A stretch of DNA of 64,000 nucleotides from IMGVR_UViG_3300036944_001289:124001-188000, one strand, 5' to 3'; counted from the first letter of the stretch, positions 44,518 through 52,679 are shown. Program-made: numbers and translations. The notes: generated from the letters alone by a model not told the origin.

Positions 44518-45666
44518 CTAGCCGACAAAGAATAGAGGAGGTTCATTATCACCAAGCCCGGGTGTAGCACCGGTATATAGTTGCTCTTCGAGTTTTTCCT
44601 TCTCAGCAAGACCTTCCGATAACATGTCTGCATTTACAGATCCACCACCGAATAATGTAGTACCTTGGTACTTACCACGCACTCTTGCAAGTACTATTTT
44701 TGTTAATGCAAGAGAATATTGATATACCCACTGCTCTTGTATTACATCTCTTAAAGGCTTTTCAACATAACAGCTTATAACACCATAATATTGTGAAGTG
44801 CTTTCACCAGCTTTTGGTTGAGGATATATTCTCATTAACTGAGTTCTTTCATTAAAGTCGTATGAAGGTTTAATTGCCAGTAACTTCTCTCTATTGTTTA
44901 ACCAGTCCTTTAATACATACCAGCTTATTAAATCAAAGCCGTAATTACCCATCGCATAACTGAAATAGGTTTGTTGTGCTAATGTTTGTTCAATTGTAAA
45001 CAGCGTATTAATACCTGTTGTAGATCCTTGTTCAAAGTCTGTAATAGCGATTACTTTACGATAATCCATTACGTCATAATCAAAAGAGTTATTATATTTT
45101 GTAGATGATACTGGTGTACCTAATTGTGTTATCTGTCTTTGAGATGTTTGTGTAAAATTAGCTGATAGAGATGAATTAAAAGCAGTAATTTGACTATATA
45201 TTGTTGTATCAAATATTTCATTTACAAATAGACCACCACTTAGTGCTGCAGATAAACTTGTAGATGTATTAAAGTAACCTGAATTTGTTGCTGTATTTAC
45301 TACGTATGCAACAGTTTGCTGTGGTACGTAATTTGTATATTGAGGGTTAGAAGTTTTACCTTTTGTCTGATCTAACACACTTGCATCGTTTAATGTTACT
45401 AAAGAGTCTAGTCTAATACCAACATCTTTCTCATAAAGGTTACTATTGAATAATATATACTCTCTGGTATAACCGGCAAATTTAGTAAACATTTCACAAG
45501 CTATGCTAATATTTTCATATAACTGGTCTCTATGAACCTCTACATTTATAAATGGGTAACCAAGGCTTCTAAGAATTCTTTCTGATAATCTATTAAAAGA
45601 AGTTATCTTGTTTGAAAGATTAGTACTTTGAAAAGCAGAGATGGGTGTTATATCGCACTGTGACAT
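44518..45666 (-). CDS. neck protein gp13
   Basis: RSLGYPFINVE, WVYQYSLAL.K..L, KYQGTTLFGG, PPLFFVG. Confidence 0.85.
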   Translation of the reverse strand: MSQCDITPISAFQSTNLSNKITSFNRLSERILRSLGYPFINVEVHRDQLYENISIACEMFTKFAGYTREYILFNSNLYEKDVGIRLDSLVTLNDASVLDQTKGKTSNPQYTNYVPQQTVAYVVNTATNSGYFNTSTSLSAALSGGLFVNEIFDTTIYSQITAFNSSLSANFTQTSQRQITQLGTPVSSTKYNNSFDYDVMDYRKVIAITDFEQGSTTGINTLFTIEQTLAQQTYFSYAMGNYGFDLISWYVLKDWLNNREKLLAIKPSYDFNERTQLMRIYPQPKAGESTSQYYGVISCYVEKPLRDVIQEQWVYQYSLALTKIVLARVRGKYQGTTLFGGGSVNADMLSEGLAEKEKLEEQLYTGATPGLGDNEPPLFFVG

Positions 45667-45705: not shown

Positions 45706-47475
45706 TTATTGTGGTGCGGGTGTTTCAGCTGGTGCTGCTTCTGCACCACCAGTTTCAACTGGAGCTTCTCCACCTACTTCAGCGGGACCTCCACCAAACT
45801 CCGGTGGTGAACCTGCTGGTGATTGTTGCTCACCCGCACCACCTATTTCACTACCTGCTGCTGCTTGATTTTGTTGACTCATTGTCTGTAGTTGATCTCT
45901 CCAATTTGGACCAGCATTTGTAATATTATTAAGCTCCCACTCAAGCTCTTTATCCTTACGGAGGAATTCACGATTTGCCTTAATGTCAATATCACTCCAA
46001 CCAAGAATTTTCTTTTGTAAATATGTAGGAGAGATAGTAGGATTGCTCGCAAGGGTATTAAAGTTATTTGTTTTAAGTTCTAATTTTTGGCTCTCTCTTA
46101 ACTCATAAAAGTTAGTAGGTACATTAAATTCTAATGATATATGCTGTTCTTTAATGTCGTATTTTTCTACTAGACCTTTAAGATTTAAGTGTGTTAAAAA
46201 TCCATTTTTTAATGCACCTGCAAATTGTTGTTGTAAGCGAATAATAAACTTAGCAAACTTGAGCTCTTCTCTTAAAATTTCTGCACCATCTTTGAAAGTA
46301 CTCTCAGAGTTAAGTCTATTAGTAGGTACTTTTAATGATTTGTAAAGTTTGTTTACAAAGTACATTAAGTCTGTTAGCTCACCAAGATTTGCACCACCAG
46401 CTAATTGTGTAACAGATGTGCCTTCGCTACCTTGTCTTTTTGCAAACCAAAAAGAGTCCAACATTGATTGTGGATTAAATTTCTGAACTATACCAGATTG
46501 ATTGACGTCGAAAGTCTTCTTGCTCCAGTACTCTTGAATTAATTTACGTAAATAAGCTTCAGCTTTTGGTGGTGGCATGTTACCAACATCAACATTAAAT
46601 ACTAGACGTTCAGGAGCTCTTACCAATCTATATATTACTATAGAGTCTTCTATAAGAGATAACTGTCTGTAAGCTCTTCTTGAATTTTCAATAAACGGTA
46701 ATCTAAAAGATTTATCTTGATTCCATATGCCAGAATTAATATATGTAACCTGGTTTTTATCCATAGGGATAAACTCATACTTAATTACTTTATTAGGCTT
46801 AGCAGGATCAAAAATAGGCTTTCTTAGAATATAACCTTTAATAATCATATTCTGAATATTATCAAAAATAGGATCGATTAACTCCGTAGGCAACTGTACC
46901 ACGCCAAGTATACCTTCTTCTGGAAACTTTTTATGAACTACATGTTCAAAGTAAACTTCACCCTCCACTATTAACTGTCTAAAATATTCCCAGCCTTTTC
47001 TTTCAAGATTAAAATATTCTACGTATTTTTGAAACTCTTTAATTATCTGTTCCTTATCTATATCTTTTAAGTCAATATTTTTAAATTGTAACTTAACAAT
47101 ATCACCTGCTTGATCTTTATTGATTGTTTCATCACAAATCTCATCTAAACAATCAGATATTTCAGAGAATGCCGCCATCACTCTGTAATCCATTATTCTC
47201 GCACCCTTATCAGCCTGTATATTGGCATATACCATATCATTGTATATGCCACCTTTTGCTATAGAACCAGATGGTGTGTTATTATAATCATTATCAAAAA
47301 ATACGCTATTACGAGCTAAAGCTTCGGAACGTTTAGACCCTGTGTCCTGGAATATTTGATACTTAGGATTTATCTGATTTAAGTATCCATTTAGATCAAG
47401 AGTTTGGTATGGTAACTTATTTACAAGGTTTTTAAAGAAACCACCGGATACTGTATTTTTATCGTCTGCAGCCAT
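45706..47475 (-). CDS. portal protein gp20
   Basis: RQLSLIEDSIVIYRLVRAPERLVFNVDVGNMPPPKAEAY, GEILREELKFAKFI.RLQ. Confidence 0.97.
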   Translation of the reverse strand: MAADDKNTVSGGFFKNLVNKLPYQTLDLNGYLNQINPKYQIFQDTGSKRSEALARNSVFFDNDYNNTPSGSIAKGGIYNDMVYANIQADKGARIMDYRVMAAFSEISDCLDEICDETINKDQAGDIVKLQFKNIDLKDIDKEQIIKEFQKYVEYFNLERKGWEYFRQLIVEGEVYFEHVVHKKFPEEGILGVVQLPTELIDPIFDNIQNMIIKGYILRKPIFDPAKPNKVIKYEFIPMDKNQVTYINSGIWNQDKSFRLPFIENSRRAYRQLSLIEDSIVIYRLVRAPERLVFNVDVGNMPPPKAEAYLRKLIQEYWSKKTFDVNQSGIVQKFNPQSMLDSFWFAKRQGSEGTSVTQLAGGANLGELTDLMYFVNKLYKSLKVPTNRLNSESTFKDGAEILREELKFAKFIIRLQQQFAGALKNGFLTHLNLKGLVEKYDIKEQHISLEFNVPTNFYELRESQKLELKTNNFNTLASNPTISPTYLQKKILGWSDIDIKANREFLRKDKELEWELNNITNAGPNWRDQLQTMSQQNQAAAGSEIGGAGEQQSPAGSPPEFGGGPAEVGGEAPVETGGAEAAPAETPAPQ

Positions 47476-47539: not shown

Positions 47540-49792
47540 TTAAGTATATAAACCACCCGTTGCTGCTACACCAAGAGCATTACCAAGTAAATAATTACTG
47601 GCACCACCATTTGTATAAATTAATGAATTATTCCATACATTATAATATTTACCTGAATAAACAGCGACACCAGAAAAGGTAGGTCTAGTTCCAAATGTTG
47701 GTGTAAGGTTAATTGTAGCAAGGTTACGTGCAACAGCAAAAGCATCTGTTAATGTCAAATTACCAGCACCATAAGCCAAATTAGACCCTGGATTAACACG
47801 TATATATCCATTGTTTTCAGCTAACATATGTGCATAAATTTGCGAACCACTTACGACACTTATATTCCAACTAGCATTTACCCATATTTCACCACCTTCT
47901 GTAGCATACAGATGAATTAACGCAGAATTACTACCTATAAACGTTATACCTGTACCTATTAACAATCTTGCTGTAGATCTTGCACAAGATGCAAATGTAA
48001 CTAATAAGTTTGATATACTTACCTGACCTCTACCTATACGAAATGGATTAGTATTATTTCCTAGTGTAACTGTACCGACACCAATACCACTTAGTGTCGT
48101 TAAATTAACATTCGTTGGTCCAAGAAGAAGATTACTAGATATTTCATATGTACCTGGTTTTAATAATATTGTTGGTGATACTGATGTTTGTATAGCTAAA
48201 CCACCAATGTAGTCAAATGCTTTTTGAACAGTTAAAAAAGGATTATCATCAGTACCGGTACCTGATAAATTACTACCTGTAGTTGAAACGTATAGTGTAA
48301 AATTAGTATCTATAGCGTTAGCTGTATTGACAGTTACATCTATATTTTGAGAACCAGCATCGGTAGCAGATATAGTTGTACCAACAAAATTAATACCAGT
48401 AACACCTACAACAACGGTAGTACCTTCATCCTTTATTGTTAACGATGATACAGCAAGGTTAGGATTAAAACTACTTAGAGTATTTAATACTATTTTCTCT
48501 GCAGATGTTATTAAACCTTTTGTTGAGGTAGTAGCTAGATCAAGCATCGAAGTTACTTGTGTAGGTGTTAAATCCTCAACATTACCGGTACCTGCTGTTA
48601 TTCTACCTTTAATGACATTAGTTGATACTTGCGATAATTTAGTATTACCAATTACACCGCTATCAACAGTCCAAGATGTACCGCTACCTGATACAGTTAT
48701 ATCACCTTTATCACCGTCAGTAAGACTGCCTGAAACACTTACTGTAATATTACCTGGTGAAGATAATGATGATTGAACACTTGCACCAATAAAATTAATA
48801 GATGATACAGATGTGGATATAGTAATACCTTCATCTTTTACGGTTAAAGATGGTGAGATGATATTGGGGTTGAAACTACTTAGAGTATTTAATACTATTT
48901 TCTCTGCAGATGTTATTAAACCTTTTGAAGACGTAGTAGCTAGATCAAGCATTAAAGTTGCTTGTGTAGTCGTTAAGTCTTCTAGATTACCTGTACCTGC
49001 TGTTGTTCTACCTTTAAAAACACCTGAAGATACTTGTGATAATTTAGCGTTACTAACTACATTAGAATCAATTGTCCAAGATGTACCTGAGCCAGATACA
49101 GTTATATCACCTTTATCGCCATCGGTAATTGCTCCAGAAACACTTACTATAATATTACTCGGTGATGATAATGATGATTGAACGCTTGCACCAATAAAGT
49201 TAATCGATGTTACAGAAGTTGATACAGTAGTACCTTCATCCTTTATTGTTAACGATGATACAGCAAGGTTAGGATTGAAACTACTTAGAGTATTTAATAC
49301 TATTTTCTCTGCAGATGTTATTAAACCTTTTGTGGAGGTAGTGGCTAAATCAAGCATTGAAGTTATCTGTGCTGTAGTTAGGTCTTGTACATCGCCCATA
49401 CCAGTTGATATTCTACCTTTAATAGTATTAGCAGATATAGTAGCTAATTTTGTATTTGTTACTGCATTAGAATCAATAGTCCAGGTAGCTCCTGAACTAG
49501 ACACGGTTATATCGCCTTTATCACCATCTGTAATTGATCCAGAAACACTTACAGTTATATTACCAGGAGAAGAGATAGATGCTTGTACTGTAGCTCCGAC
49601 AAAATTAATTGATGATACAGTAGTTGAAACTGTTGTACCTTCGTCTTTTATAGTTAAAACTTGTGGTATAGAAGACTTTATATCTGAAAATGTAATTTTA
49701 TTAACAACACCATCTGTGGTAGATATAGGAATAATATCACTATCACTTGGAGTTGTAATAGAAGATAAATCAATAAACTGTTTGTATTTCAT
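47540..49792 (-). CDS. long tail-fibre-like protein with three 135-aa repeats
   Basis: Repeated TIKDEG...ITDGDKGDITVS...LDLATT..KGL; C-terminal YVSTTG...PF.TVQKA beta-helix-type domain. Confidence 0.75.
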   Translation of the reverse strand: MKYKQFIDLSSITTPSDSDIIPISTTDGVVNKITFSDIKSSIPQVLTIKDEGTTVSTTVSSINFVGATVQASISSPGNITVSVSGSITDGDKGDITVSSSGATWTIDSNAVTNTKLATISANTIKGRISTGMGDVQDLTTAQITSMLDLATTSTKGLITSAEKIVLNTLSSFNPNLAVSSLTIKDEGTTVSTSVTSINFIGASVQSSLSSPSNIIVSVSGAITDGDKGDITVSGSGTSWTIDSNVVSNAKLSQVSSGVFKGRTTAGTGNLEDLTTTQATLMLDLATTSSKGLITSAEKIVLNTLSSFNPNIISPSLTVKDEGITISTSVSSINFIGASVQSSLSSPGNITVSVSGSLTDGDKGDITVSGSGTSWTVDSGVIGNTKLSQVSTNVIKGRITAGTGNVEDLTPTQVTSMLDLATTSTKGLITSAEKIVLNTLSSFNPNLAVSSLTIKDEGTTVVVGVTGINFVGTTISATDAGSQNIDVTVNTANAIDTNFTLYVSTTGSNLSGTGTDDNPFLTVQKAFDYIGGLAIQTSVSPTILLKPGTYEISSNLLLGPTNVNLTTLSGIGVGTVTLGNNTNPFRIGRGQVSISNLLVTFASCARSTARLLIGTGITFIGSNSALIHLYATEGGEIWVNASWNISVVSGSQIYAHMLAENNGYIRVNPGSNLAYGAGNLTLTDAFAVARNLATINLTPTFGTRPTFSGVAVYSGKYYNVWNNSLIYTNGGASNYLLGNALGVAATGGLYT
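48468..49332 (-). repeat. 405-bp period tandem repeat inside the fibre gene
   Basis: Identical ~55-bp block at 48468, 48873 and 49278. Confidence 0.9.
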
Positions 49793-49801
49793 TGTTATTA
49801 T

Positions 49802-50335
49802 TTATATAAGATAAATAGCGCTTGTGCTATCTACAAAAACATTATTATCGTTATCTACACATATGCTTAATAAAGACTCTGGCGTTAGGAATAACGATCT
49901 ACCATCTGGTCTTCTATATGTAAAAGATGATACGGGTCTAATATAGGTTATTATTAATGGTGTTGTTACAGATATTACAGTACTATTTGAAGATAAATAT
50001 GGTGAAAATAACGTTTTAGAGCTCTCTGAGTACCCAGCAACATTATATGGTATGAATTGTATATCACAATCACCTATTAATCTAGGTACATTTATTAAAA
50101 TATTATTTTTGTCTATAACAGTATAATCAACTAAAGAACCTGTAATAGGCTGCTGTCTTTTGAATATGTTTATACTAGTTAGTGATGGTAAAGAAAATGT
50201 ATCGTTACTCGATAACATAACATTTAAAAGCTTATCAAAATTATATCCCTGTAAACCTACAACACTTAAATTATTTGTGTTTGTGGTTAACGTATCGTAT
50301 AATTTTATACCATCGACTGTAATGCTGGTTATCAT
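49802..50335 (-). CDS. structural protein downstream of gp15
   Basis: Start re-called at ATG 50335 (ATGA overlap with gp15 stop); Ig-like T/S/N-rich sequence. Confidence 0.55.
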   Translation of the reverse strand: MITSITVDGIKLYDTLTTNTNNLSVVGLQGYNFDKLLNVMLSSNDTFSLPSLTSINIFKRQQPITGSLVDYTVIDKNNILINVPRLIGDCDIQFIPYNVAGYSESSKTLFSPYLSSNSTVISVTTPLIITYIRPVSSFTYRRPDGRSLFLTPESLLSICVDNDNNVFVDSTSAIYLI

Positions 50336-51090
50336 GGATTTGCTGATACTCCTACAAATTCCGTTTCTGTTAAAATACCTGTAGATACAGGCCATGTATA
50401 GGTATTACCTGAGAGACTATCATAGGTTGTTATCCTACTCTCAACATTAAAATTATTATTAATATAATATATTAATCCTTTTGGATTTTGCTGAGTCTTA
50501 AACAACCAACCTTTTATCGTAAAAGACGTGTCAGCTGTACATCTATATTTATCGGTACTTGAGATATCTGTAGGGTATGATAATGCAATACCACCTTCCC
50601 AGAGAACTTCGCTTCTTATTTCTTGATTTAATGATAGACCTAAATCCTCTGGTACCTTCCAACCTATTATAATGTATGGATTAGCATAAGGTACAAAGTT
50701 ACTTAGTATTTGATCCATGTCTGTCTGATATTTTGTTATTATCGACATACTTACACTTATATTAATAGGTACAGGTGATAAAAGATGAGATACACTATTT
50801 TGAGTACCATCGTTTTTACCATAATAGAAACCATCAAGTTTATTGAAAACTCTATTAACATCCCTAGATATATTTGTTATAGATACAGATACTACTGGTA
50901 GTGTTAAGTTTTTAGCTTGGTTTATTATATCATATAATACACGCTGTTTAGGTGCATATACATATCTTACTTCAATTGACTGTTCTGTTTTTCTTTCTCT
51001 ATTATATCGCTGAATTACAGTATCGTCAAACGCAGCAATAAACTGCGTTATAAGATCTTTTACTTCGAAAAAATACGTTTTTGATTTAAT
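50332..51090 (-). CDS. tail terminator/sheath stabiliser gp15 with probable AUU start
   Basis: Frame stays open 114 codons upstream of the track start: IKSKTYFFEVKDLITQFIAAFDD...VRYVYAPKQR...TLPVVSV; no NTG before the upstream TAA. Confidence 0.8.
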   Translation of the reverse strand: MKSKTYFFEVKDLITQFIAAFDDTVIQRYNRERKTEQSIEVRYVYAPKQRVLYDIINQAKNLTLPVVSVSITNISRDVNRVFNKLDGFYYGKNDGTQNSVSHLLSPVPINISVSMSIITKYQTDMDQILSNFVPYANPYIIIGWKVPEDLGLSLNQEIRSEVLWEGGIALSYPTDISSTDKYRCTADTSFTIKGWLFKTQQNPKGLIYYINNNFNVESRITTYDSLSGNTYTWPVSTGILTETEFVGVSANP

Positions 51091-51095
51091 GTTGC

Positions 51096-51104
51096 ACCTC
51101 CTTA
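51096..51104 (-). promoter_or_regulatory. perfect Shine-Dalgarno TAAGGAGGT, 5 nt before ATT
   Basis: Read directly; preceded by a TAAATA late element. Confidence 0.8.
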
Positions 51105-51113
51105 TAATATTTA

Positions 51114-51506
51114 TTAGTTATAATGCTTTAATAGAGTCGCAAGCATTTCCAGTTTTGTTGTAATCTGACTATATTTTTTAAGCTTCTTCATTTCGGATAC
51201 AGAATCAACAGTTTTATCTATCAAATTTTTTAGTTGATTTTTAGTCATCTTACCGTATCCTTTTACCATAATTTCTTCACTTTCACTAAACGAACCTGAT
51301 GCTCCTGGAATACCTGCAGTGTTTGTTTTAGCTGAATTACCTGGTAAGTTACTAGTACTGTTAGCATTAGCGTAGCTGTTCTTTACGTCAGATGTTGGCA
51401 TATTATTATGTGCTTGATTTTTTTGCTGTGTATCAGCAATAGCCCACATATTGAGACCGCTTTCATACAACATACCTATCTGCTTTATGTCATTAAGTTT
51501 ATCCAT
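51114..51506 (-). CDS. late hypothetical protein
   Basis: TAAATA 5 nt upstream; MLYE leader. Confidence 0.6.
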   Translation of the reverse strand: MDKLNDIKQIGMLYESGLNMWAIADTQQKNQAHNNMPTSDVKNSYANANSTSNLPGNSAKTNTAGIPGASGSFSESEEIMVKGYGKMTKNQLKNLIDKTVDSVSEMKKLKKYSQITTKLEMLATLLKHYN

Positions 51507-51519
51507 AATTATATTTACA

Positions 51520-51557
51520 TAAAAAAAGCTGGGTTGTTAACAACCCAGCTTTTTTTA
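51520..51557. terminator. perfect 38-bp palindrome, terminator
   Basis: TAAAAAAAGCTGGGTTGTT/AACAACCCAGCTTTTTTTA. Confidence 0.8.
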
Positions 51558-52028: not shown

Positions 52029-52679
52029 ATGAGCTTTCACGAAGAATTAAATAATCTTTACGCAAAACAAATAGCAGGTAAATCTATACTTGTAAATGAA
52101 AATAGTCAAAAGACAGTAAATGAAGCATTCCCACCCTATGAAGCAGGTGAATATGCCCCCGAACATCCTACTGCTCGTGAAAAAATGTTAGCTTTAGCAA
52201 AGAGTACACATGAAGAAACACCAGAAGGTGAAAGACCACGTGTTGCATATCAAGGTGCAGAACCTGGTACACATACATGGCGCTTCTATTTAGCGTTTAT
52301 AACAAAATTTAGAGAAATGTCACCAGAAACATCTGTTAAAGTTGCTAATTTAATTTTAACACAAATACTTGATAAACTATCTGAAAGCCCAGATGGTAGA
52401 TTTATGGGTACAAATCTTCAATTTAGAGAGCAAGTAGTTAAGCCTATTGTTGCAAGAGCAATACCTGAAATGACAAAAGGTGATGTAAAGATAGGTAAAA
52501 CATATGTTGAGTATATTGCAAGAGGTATAACCGATGCTGCAGTACAATCAGGTATATTAAGAAACTTCTCTGATGACGAGTTTCCACGCAACAAACCAAA
52601 GGATAAACCAATTACAGATCCTGCAGGTCTAGGTAAGTACTCAGCACAAAATCTAGATAAATTACTCGGACTAGATTAA
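52029..52679 (+). CDS. late hypothetical protein
   Basis: Start re-called at 52029 (TAAATA 5 nt upstream). Confidence 0.6.
   Translation: MSFHEELNNLYAKQIAGKSILVNENSQKTVNEAFPPYEAGEYAPEHPTAREKMLALAKSTHEETPEGERPRVAYQGAEPGTHTWRFYLAFITKFREMSPETSVKVANLILTQILDKLSESPDGRFMGTNLQFREQVVKPIVARAIPEMTKGDVKIGKTYVEYIARGITDAAVQSGILRNFSDDEFPRNKPKDKPITDPAGLGKYSAQNLDKLLGLD

What the first reader, a model, noticed from the sequence alone, without database searches (positions are those of the whole stretch)
51060..51120. gp15 appears to start at AUU, behind the only perfect Shine-Dalgarno noticed in the window
Seen: the gp15 frame extends 114 codons beyond the first ATG with conserved gp15 motifs. Between the upstream in-frame TAA (51118-51120) and this region there is no ATG/GTG/TTG, but TAAGGAGGT-GCAAC-ATT-AAA gives ideal spacing. 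Known: AUU starts are rare and IF3-sensitive (infC, pcnB). Inference: deliberate low-level or regulated expression of a low-copy tail terminator in an otherwise SD-poor genome.
Basis: partly seen in the sequence, partly recalled or inferred. Interest (0 to 1): 0.6.

Follow-up and report, generated by a model that had tools for sequence, protein, structure and literature searches.

The report
Phage tail gene starting at ATT
A tail-completion gene (gp15) of an uncultured T4-like phage almost certainly starts at the weak codon ATT behind a perfect ribosome-binding site that this genome otherwise never uses, and related phages have arrived at the same pairing several times.

Summary
On the minus strand, TAAGGAGGT (51104-51096), a 5-nt spacer and ATT (51090-51088) open a 252-codon gp15 frame (PF16724). 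No ATG, GTG or TTG lies between the in-frame TAA and codon 115.

- **Real and conserved.** 22 independently assembled contigs from three sub-lineages keep both the motif and the ATT, although about 27% of codons carry silent changes. Codons 2-24 change almost only silently.
- **Homologous start.** Farther relatives have ATG or GTG at exactly this codon.
- **No Shine-Dalgarno (SD) elsewhere.** SD-like pairing at gene starts in the 209-kb genome is no commoner than at random sites. This site is the strongest, and the 9-mer occurs once.
- **Recurrence.** Of 106 distinct gp15 relatives, 78 start with GTG, 16 ATG and 3 TTG, none with an SD. ATT or ATA starts arose at least 5-7 times and nearly always carry a GGAGG-type SD 5-10 nt upstream.
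- **Second case.** An amidotransferase gene in the same genome has ATT exactly where relatives have Met before the catalytic Cys.

The kind is known (infC; S. aureus cvfC1 and ccpN). The SD-free setting and the recurrence are new. That the purpose is low or regulated expression is plausible but not shown. Reads could not be checked.

The parts
50332..51090 (-). gp15 tail sheath stabiliser / tail completion gene: 252 codons from ATT, plus TGA stop at 50334-50332
   Evidence: PF16724 E 8e-21; T4 gp15 PDB chains E 1e-7; 2453 homologues found; synteny with the portal in relatives
51088..51090 (-). ATT, inferred initiation codon
   Evidence: Aligns with the ATG or GTG start of relatives. Invariant in 22 contigs. 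It is the only near-cognate codon at SD spacing.
51091..51095 (-). 5-nt spacer GCAAC
   Evidence: Varies between sub-lineages (GCAAC, GCAAA, ACAAT) while the SD and ATT do not
51096..51104 (-). Shine-Dalgarno TAAGGAGGT; G51095 extends the 16S complement to 10 nt
   Evidence: -13.5 kcal/mol to ACCUCCUUA. Unique in the genome. Invariant in relatives.
51108..51115 (-). AATAAATA, T4-type late-promoter-like box. Predicted transcript start is A51102, giving the 12-nt leader AGGAGGUGCAAC (inferred).
   Evidence: Box-to-start spacing is 5 nt in 28 genes of this genome. The same box-N5-AGGAGG layout recurs in other ATT/ATA lineages. A gp55 homologue is present. Box geometry from PMC2988020.
51118..51120 (-). 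In-frame TAA that closes the gp15 frame upstream
   Evidence: conserved in relatives
51114..51506 (-). Upstream 130-aa gene of unknown function. Its TAA stop (51116-51114) lies 23 nt before the ATT, in another frame.
   Evidence: no Pfam or PHROG match; present before gp15 in relatives
50746..50748 (-). First canonical start (ATG) in the gp15 frame, codon 115. A gene caller would take it, giving a truncated 138-aa protein.
51016..51018 (-). Codon 25, GTA here but GTG in the closest relatives. Callers used it there to make 228-aa truncated proteins.
51520..51557 (.). Palindromic terminator-like hairpin flanked by A and T runs, upstream of the 130-aa gene. It bounds the transcription unit.

Best explanation
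gp15 is translated from AUU at 51090-51088 by ordinary initiator-tRNA near-cognate initiation. The 9-10-nt SD five bases upstream anchors the 30S subunit so that the weak codon can be used. In this phage clade the normal arrangement is a late-promoter box exactly 5 nt before a GTG or ATG with no SD, which probably gives a leaderless late mRNA. In the window's clade a short cassette of SD plus spacer sits between that box and the start. The predicted gp15 transcript therefore begins with AGGAGG and has a 12-nt leader. Ribosomes terminating on the upstream gene 23 nt away could be captured by the same SD. A weak codon with a strong SD probably gives an output similar to the family's usual weak leaderless GTG, suited to a protein needed at six copies per virion. 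Shown here: the sequence anatomy, conservation, homology of the start, absence of SD elsewhere, and the recurrent ATT/ATA-with-SD pairing. Inferred: that AUU is read by fMet-tRNA, the transcript 5' end, and the expression level.
For: 1. Relatives P0003, P0009, P0010 and P0013 start with M exactly where the window has I: MKNETYFFE against IKSKTYFFE.
2. SD, 5-nt spacer and ATT are invariant in 22 contigs from JGI, ENA and Logan assemblies covering three sub-lineages, while the spacer varies.
3. Window against L002: codons 2-24 differ by 4 silent and 0 replacement changes; codons 25-252 by 62 silent and 15 replacement changes.
4. This genome does not use SD. Only 7.8% of 294 gene starts pair at -4.4 kcal/mol or better, against 6.7% of random sites, and G is depleted upstream of starts. 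As a control, 21 of 50 starts in Pelagibacter phage HTVC008M pair at -6 kcal/mol or better.
5. Among 140 gp15 loci, every GTG, ATG or TTG start has SD energy of -4.0 or weaker. ATT and ATA starts have -6.1 to -13.5.
6. On the tree, ATT/ATA/ATC starts need 7 changes, at least 5 of them on well-supported branches. SD goes with them in 5 of 5 supported and 7 of 7 total independent pairs.
7. The distance from the GGAGG core to the start is 5-10 nt in the SD-bearing lineages.
8. A second gene in the same genome, a class-II amidotransferase, reads TAG GGT AAC TAT ATT TGC. Relatives begin MCGI, with the catalytic Cys directly after the initiator Met. A purine-rich SD-like stretch lies upstream. Other lineages of that gene have GGAGAAG-N8-ATT.
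9. The initiation region is unstructured.
10. In S. aureus all non-canonical AUU and AUA starts carry extended SDs and give about 10% of AUG output (PMC13009471).
Against: The host is unknown, so it is unproven that its ribosomes can use an SD. If it were a Bacteroidia-type host, ordinary ribosomes would ignore the motif (PMC13000453). The ATT-with-SD rule is not absolute. One ATT lineage (L183/L255) has no SD, and three ATC lineages (L180, L186, L229) sit in the SD-less box-N5 context. The sign test on well-supported independent pairs is only p=0.06. The amidotransferase ATT is confined to this genome's own lineage: relatives at 88% identity have ATG, so it could be a recent hypomorphic mutation.
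Confidence: 0.8

Rival explanations
1. Re-initiation is the main route. Ribosomes finishing the upstream 130-aa gene at TAA 51116-51114 stay on the mRNA, are held by the SD 10 nt downstream and restart at AUU. De novo 30S binding would contribute little. The start codon is still ATT.
For: The stop and the ATT are only 23 nt apart on the same strand. Farther relatives place the gp15 ATG 1-4 nt after the upstream stop. SDs raise re-initiation efficiency in E. coli (PMC2268962).
Against: A late-promoter-like box lies between the two genes, and the SD begins at its predicted +1 in about nine lineages, which implies a separate transcript. The amidotransferase ATT starts with an SD follow a divergently oriented gene, so they must initiate de novo.
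Confidence: 0.12
2. The ATT is a defect, either a sequencing or assembly error or a recent ATG-to-ATT mutation. On this reading gp15 is dead or is made as a truncated protein from ATG codon 115 (or from GTG codon 25 in relatives).
For: Gene callers made 228-aa and 138-aa versions. A single G-to-T change would turn ATG into ATT.
Against: ATT is present in 22 independent assemblies spanning about 10% nucleotide divergence. Codons 2-24 evolve under purifying selection. Codon 25 is GTA in the window. Residues 10-114 carry the conserved half of the Pfam domain. The gene is an essential single-copy tail gene.
Confidence: 0.03
3. Ribosomes enter the gp15 frame from the upstream gene by frameshift, read-through or a hop, for example from AAC 51119-51117 to AAC 51093-51091. 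This would make a fusion protein, with the SD-like motif acting as a stimulator as in prfB, dnaX or T4 gene 60.
For: The window has matching AAC codons before the upstream stop and directly before the ATT. SD-like motifs stimulate known recoding events (my knowledge).
Against: The landing codon is AAA in the L002 lineage and AAT in L012, so the match is not conserved. There is no slippery heptamer. Relatives encode two separate proteins with their own starts. The amidotransferase cases have no upstream co-directional gene.
Confidence: 0.02
4. The GGAGG motif is not a ribosome-binding site. It would be an initial-transcribed or 5'-end element, for promoter escape or mRNA stability, that happens to resemble an SD. 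AUU would then be used without its help.
For: The motif begins at the predicted +1 of the late promoter in about nine lineages. The genome otherwise initiates without SD.
Against: The motif is absent from all 97 distinct GTG/ATG/TTG gp15 starts and from the 34 other box-N5/N6 genes of this genome. Its distance to the start codon is within or just beyond the classic SD range. It is complementary to the 16S tail over 9-10 nt. SD-bearing ATT lineages without a nearby box also exist (L185, L197).
Confidence: 0.03

Closest known systems
E. coli infC (IF3) and pcnB AUU start codons
   Same: A conserved AUU start gives low, IF3-discriminated initiation (Sacerdot 1996 as cited in PMC2268962; PMC2939334, listed).
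   Different: Those are host regulatory genes in an SD-using genome, and infC is autoregulated by its own product. Here it is a phage structural gene in a genome with no other SD. No IF3 link was tested.
S. aureus / B. subtilis cvfC1 (AUU), ccpN (AUA), infC (AUA) with extended SD (PMC13009471)
   Same: A non-canonical AUU or AUA start, a very strong extended SD at proper spacing, and both conserved together. That study interprets it as attenuated initiation at about 10% of AUG.
   Different: Firmicutes use SD on about 90% of genes, so the SD there is a stronger version of the norm. Here the SD is unique in the genome and the pairing arose repeatedly in one gene family.
Flavobacterium johnsoniae rpsU, the lone strong SD in an SD-less genome (PMC9976891, PMC13000453)
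   Same: A single gene with an extended SD in a genome that otherwise lacks SDs and has A-rich, G-poor initiation regions.
   Different: There the SD is read only by ribosomes lacking bS21, as an autoregulatory loop. Here the host is unknown, the phage has no bS21 gene, and the start codon is non-canonical.
T4 gp15 and the HTVC008M gp15 initiation region
   Same: Same protein family. The layout of late box, SD, spacer and start is as in HTVC008M, whose gp15 start is preceded by TAAGGAG.
   Different: Those start at ATG, and their genomes use SD generally (21 of 50 starts in HTVC008M).

Membership tests
T4-gp15 tail sheath stabiliser / tail completion protein (PF16724) | Sequence match to the family profile above the curated cut-off | tested here: met
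   74.8 bits against a cut-off of 25, E 8e-21; 73.9 bits in the genome search
T4-gp15 tail sheath stabiliser / tail completion protein (PF16724) | Relation to the solved T4 gp15 structure | tested here: met
   A profile of 20 relatives hits 4HUH and 3J2M at E 1e-7 over residues 90-218. The fold itself was not modelled.
T4-gp15 tail sheath stabiliser / tail completion protein (PF16724) | Location in the T4-like neck, tail and portal module | tested here: met
   Portal_T4 and Phage_T4_gp13 genes lie just downstream in relatives. The portal is at window 45706-47475.
Genes initiated at a non-canonical AUU/AUA codon with an extended SD | No canonical start is available, and the AUH codon sits at the homologous start position | tested here: met
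Genes initiated at a non-canonical AUU/AUA codon with an extended SD | Extended SD (8 nt or more) at functional spacing, conserved together with the codon | tested here: met
   9-10 nt complementarity, 5-nt spacer, invariant in 22 contigs
Genes initiated at a non-canonical AUU/AUA codon with an extended SD | Initiation complex or N-terminal Met demonstrated on the AUH codon | not testable with these tools
   Needs proteomics, toeprinting or ribosome profiling.
IF3-autoregulated or IF3-sensitive AUU genes (infC type) | Expression responds to IF3 level | not testable with these tools
A phage IF3 gene was not searched for.
bS21-gated SD genes of Bacteroidia (rpsU type) | Host ribosomes sequester the anti-SD (Bacteroidia host) | tested here: inconclusive
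   The host is unknown. The best isolate match for the portal is 32% identity, to cyanomyoviruses. The only genome-collection hit is a probably mis-binned MAG contig. No phage bS21 gene.
T4-type late transcription unit | Late sigma (gp55) gene and a TATAAATA-like box about 10 bp before the transcript start | tested here: met
   A gp55 homologue lies at genome 122475-122798, E 5e-17. The box AATAAATA is at 51115-51108. The transcript 5' end itself was not tested.

The most novel reading that the evidence does not exclude
This uncultured phage clade uses two fixed initiation layouts. In the first, late genes are transcribed as leaderless mRNAs from T4-type late promoters placed exactly 5 nt before the start codon: 34 genes in this genome, and 48 of the 57 motif-located GTG-start gp15 genes in one scan of relatives. 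In the second, genes that carry AUU or AUA instead have a cassette whose SD begins at the very first transcribed base, giving an 11-16-nt leader. Lineages switch repeatedly between leaderless GUG and 5'-terminal SD plus AUH to hold gp15 at a low set point. Both layouts belong to the IF3-sensitive classes of initiation, so gp15 output could track the state of the host's initiation machinery late in infection.
Probability: 0.3. Interest if true: 0.75.

Novelty: new member of a known kind. Interest (0 to 1): 0.55.

Why it matters
It is a clean natural experiment on start-codon choice. In a phage lineage whose genes carry no SD, an SD appears almost only where the start codon is AUU or AUA, and this happened repeatedly. 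That implies the host ribosome can use an SD, and that a near-cognate codon needs one.

It also exposes a systematic annotation error. Public protein sets hold this gp15 as 228-aa or 138-aa fragments, and the amidotransferase as a 127-aa fragment.

The fixed 5-nt spacing between the late box and the start codon, if it means leaderless late mRNAs, would be a new feature of T4-like gene expression and could be tested with metatranscriptome 5' ends.

Tried and rejected
- **Near-identical phage records.** None found. The best isolate hits are 25-32% identical cyanomyoviruses and HTVC008M.
- **Hop or frameshift from the upstream gene.** The matching AAC codons in the window are not conserved in L002 or L012. 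Rejected.
- **Phage-encoded helpers.** No bS21 gene. Neither of the two tRNA-Met(CAT) genes looks like an initiator by eye: no GGG/CCC anticodon stem and no 1:72 mismatch. No tRNA in the window.
- **Regulatory hairpin over the SD or ATT.** None; the region folds less well than shuffles.
- **Host identification.** No psbA. The genome-collection scan gave one MAG contig labelled Bacteriovoracaceae, probably mis-binned phage DNA. Unresolved.
- **Third candidate start** (genome 201765, CGGAGGGT-ACG-ATT-TTG). No relatives found and no family match. Unresolved.
- **Coverage-based screening.** Proteins matching at 95% coverage are not a sign of ATT starts; they are GTG-start genes called from an internal ATG.
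- **Literature.** No paper found on ATT-start gp15 or on leaderless T4-type late mRNAs. The held library is incomplete.
- **Not used.** The large representative search, structure prediction and complex prediction were not needed.

Full report
**Where the window lies.** The window is bases 124001-188000 of a 209,282-bp IMG/VR virus record with direct terminal repeats, rated complete. The genome is 33% G+C and carries 27 tRNA genes. It is a T4-like myovirus far from any isolate. Its gp15 is at most 28% identical, and its portal at most 32% identical, to cyanomyoviruses and Pelagibacter phage HTVC008M. It has no psbA gene. Close relatives come from Lake Michigan and other metagenomes, apparently freshwater. 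The host is unknown.

**The observation.** On the minus strand the gp15 frame reads TAA (51120-51118), then CTA ATA AAT ATT ATA AGG AGG TGC AAC, then ATT (51090-51088), and stays open to TGA at 50334-50332.
- There is no ATG, GTG or TTG before codon 115, the ATG at 50748-50746.
- TAAGGAGGT lies at 51104-51096 and is followed by GCAAC.
- The product is gp15. PF16724 matches at E 8e-21, with profile positions 7-211 on residues 10-219, so the family's N-terminus falls at the ATT. A profile of relatives finds the T4 gp15 structures.
- One copy of the 9-mer in 64 kb is no more than chance gives: 36 of 100 shuffles have at least one.
- What is not chance is described in the sections that follow.

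**The ATT is real and is the homologous start.**
- The word search found 2453 relatives. The closest, at 92-96% identity, are stored as 228-aa proteins that begin at codon 25.
- I fetched 22 contigs that encode them, from JGI, ENA and Logan assemblies of different samples. Every one has TAAGGAGGT, five bases and ATT.
- The spacer differs between the three sub-lineages (GCAAC, GCAAA, ACAAT). Codon 25 is GTG in those relatives but GTA in the window.
- Window and L002 differ by 62 silent and 15 replacement codon changes over codons 25-252, and by 4 silent and 0 replacement changes over codons 2-24. The stretch after the ATT is therefore coding and under selection.
- More distant relatives (62-84% identical) begin with M at exactly the position of the window's I.
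- Where their DNA is at hand (L025, L026), that ATG lies 1-4 nt after the upstream stop and has no SD.

**The genome does not use SD.**
- With 294 crudely called genes, 7.8% of starts pair with ACCUCCUUA at -4.4 kcal/mol or better, against 6.7% of random positions. The median is +0.4.
- G is depleted to 5-10% at most positions from -15 to -1.
- The gp15 site, at -13.5 kcal/mol, is the strongest of all. The other AAGGAGG and AGGAGGT copies lie inside genes or on the wrong strand.
- As a control, 21 of 50 annotated starts in HTVC008M reach -6 kcal/mol or better, and its gp15 start is preceded by TAAGGAG and is ATG.

**The pairing recurs.**
- I collected 140 gp15 loci from IMG/VR and other assemblies, giving 106 distinct proteins.
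- Their homologous start codons are GTG 78, ATG 16, ATT 7, TTG 3, ATA 1 and ATC 1.
- Every GTG, ATG or TTG start has SD energy of -4.0 or weaker. ATT and ATA starts have -6.1 to -13.5.
- On a maximum-likelihood tree the ATT/ATA/ATC state needs 7 changes, at least 5 of them on well-supported branches. The SD goes the same way in 5 of 5 supported pairs (sign test p=0.06) and, by the same test, in 7 of 7 pairs on all branches (p=0.016).
- An unbiased pattern scan for I-K-x5-FEIKD found 25 further gp15 loci with such starts.
- Sorted by distinct leader sequence, these are eight ATT and two ATA with an SD, one ATT without (L183/L255), and three ATC without an SD.
- So the rule is strong for ATT and ATA but not absolute.
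- The distance from the GGAGG core to the start is 5-10 nt, within or just beyond the classic SD range.

**A second ATT start in the same genome (outside the window).**
- At genome 108634-107972, minus strand, a 220-codon class-II glutamine amidotransferase reads TAG GGT AAC TAT ATT TGC GGC. This gives stop-G-N-Y-I-C-G-I-F-G.
- Relatives begin MCGI[FY]G. In this enzyme class the Cys must become the N-terminal residue (my knowledge), so the start is fixed one codon before it.
- Upstream lies AAGGAAGGTAGGGT, at -8.4 to -8.8 kcal/mol.
- Relatives at 88% identity have ATG there.
- Other lineages at 62-70% identity have ATT preceded by GGAGAAG-N8, with the neighbouring gene on the opposite strand.

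**Promoter geometry (inferred).**
- In this genome ATAAATA lies exactly 5 nt before the start codon of 28 genes and 6 nt before 6 more. All other spacings occur only 1-4 times each.
- In one scan of relatives, 48 of the 57 GTG-start gp15 genes located by motif show the same 5-nt spacing.
- TATAAATA about one helical turn before the transcript start is the T4 late promoter (PMC2988020). NATAAATA is its cyanomyovirus form (PMC2984593). The genome has a gp55 late-sigma homologue.
- A 5-nt spacer would put +1 on the first base of the start codon, which means leaderless mRNA.
- At the window's gp15 the box AATAAATA (51115-51108) is followed by TTATA and then AGGAGGTGCAAC ATT. The predicted transcript therefore starts with the SD.
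- The same box-N5/6-(A)GGAGG layout, with leaders of 11-16 nt, recurs in L002, L012, L182, L205, L214, L230, L238 and L253.
- HTVC008M shows the ordinary form of this layout, box then SD then ATG.
- The initiation region is unstructured.
- A terminator-like hairpin at 51520-51557 bounds the unit upstream.

**Mechanism and rivals.**
- The best reading is SD-assisted initiation at AUU. The kind is known from infC and pcnB, and from S. aureus cvfC1, ccpN and infC. In S. aureus every non-canonical start has an extended SD and yields about 10% of AUG output (PMC13009471).
- Re-initiation from the upstream gene may contribute. It cannot be the whole story, given the intervening promoter box and the amidotransferase cases.
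- A sequencing error, a pseudogene, an internal start, a hop or a frameshift are each contradicted by the conservation data.
- It also fits the fact that non-canonical starts and leaderless mRNAs are both IF3-sensitive classes in E. coli (PMC2268962). It remains an inference.
- If the host were SD-blind like Bacteroidia (PMC13000453), the motif would work only on special ribosomes. I rate that unlikely, because the SD arose repeatedly at canonical spacing.

**Limits.** My gene calls are crude. The host is unknown. The tree was built in quick mode.

Noticed in passing
whole genome; in the window e.g. the start of the 382-aa gene at 45666 (-) and a + strand start at 52029: ATAAATA lies exactly 5 nt before the start codon of 28 genes (6 nt for 6 more) in this genome, and before most GTG-start gp15 genes in relatives. 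With a T4-type late promoter this predicts leaderless late mRNAs. HTVC008M has only 3 such cases in 50 genes.
   Followed up: partly
genome 108634-107972 minus (L028:1473-2135), outside the window: A class-II glutamine amidotransferase gene has ATT where relatives have the Met before the catalytic Cys, behind a purine-rich SD-like stretch. The public protein call for it is a 127-aa fragment (P0185).
   Followed up: yes
genome 201765-201190 minus (L175:391-966), outside the window: CGGAGGGT-ACG-ATT-TTG-GGA-ATG: another strong SD with ATT at 5-nt spacing, directly followed by TTG, opening a 191-codon ORF with no known relatives. Which codon is used is open.
   Followed up: partly
L180, L186, L229 (and duplicates L212, L221, L268, L270, L272): Three gp15 lineages have ATC at the homologous start with no SD, in the same box-N5 context as GTG starts. 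L186 and L229 have no canonical start upstream in frame; L180 has an in-frame TTG 7 codons upstream. How these are initiated is unexplained.
   Followed up: no
L183 / L255: One ATT-start gp15 lineage has a 13-nt predicted leader without any SD, an exception to the ATT-with-SD rule.
   Followed up: no
window 47540-49792 (-): A 750-aa gene sits between the gene after gp15 and the portal. Relatives lack it. Its only database matches are weak ones to a Rhodobacter phage protein and an uncultured phage.
   Followed up: partly
window 50333-50335 (-): The gene after gp15 most likely starts at the ATG of an ATGA overlap with the gp15 stop, as in relatives, not at the longer-ORF ATG at 50395.
   Followed up: partly
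genome about 120014-120900 minus, outside the window: An ORF with 156 open codons and no canonical start continues, after a one-base frame change at an A-run (TTAAAAAGG), an upstream frame ending ...VGYWVKK. It looks like a frameshifted (or slippage-dependent) endonuclease-like gene.
   Followed up: no
L091 1501-1560 and L093 1001-1060: Upstream of the ATT-start amidotransferase in two lineages lies a remnant resembling the gene's own 5' end (ATGGTATATACGG). It is followed by a hairpin whose arms differ between lineages but stay complementary (TGCTTT/AAAGCA against CTCTTC/GAAGAG). A GIY-YIG endonuclease-like gene is next door in L093.
   Followed up: no
window 51520-51557: A 17-bp palindromic hairpin flanked by A and T runs, a terminator-like site readable on both strands, lies between the 133-aa and 130-aa genes.
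   Followed up: no
genome 37492-44944 and 195708-198864: 27 tRNA genes, including tRNA-Ile(TAT), tRNA-Ile(GAT) and two tRNA-Met(CAT). By eye, neither tRNA-Met has initiator hallmarks.
   Followed up: partly
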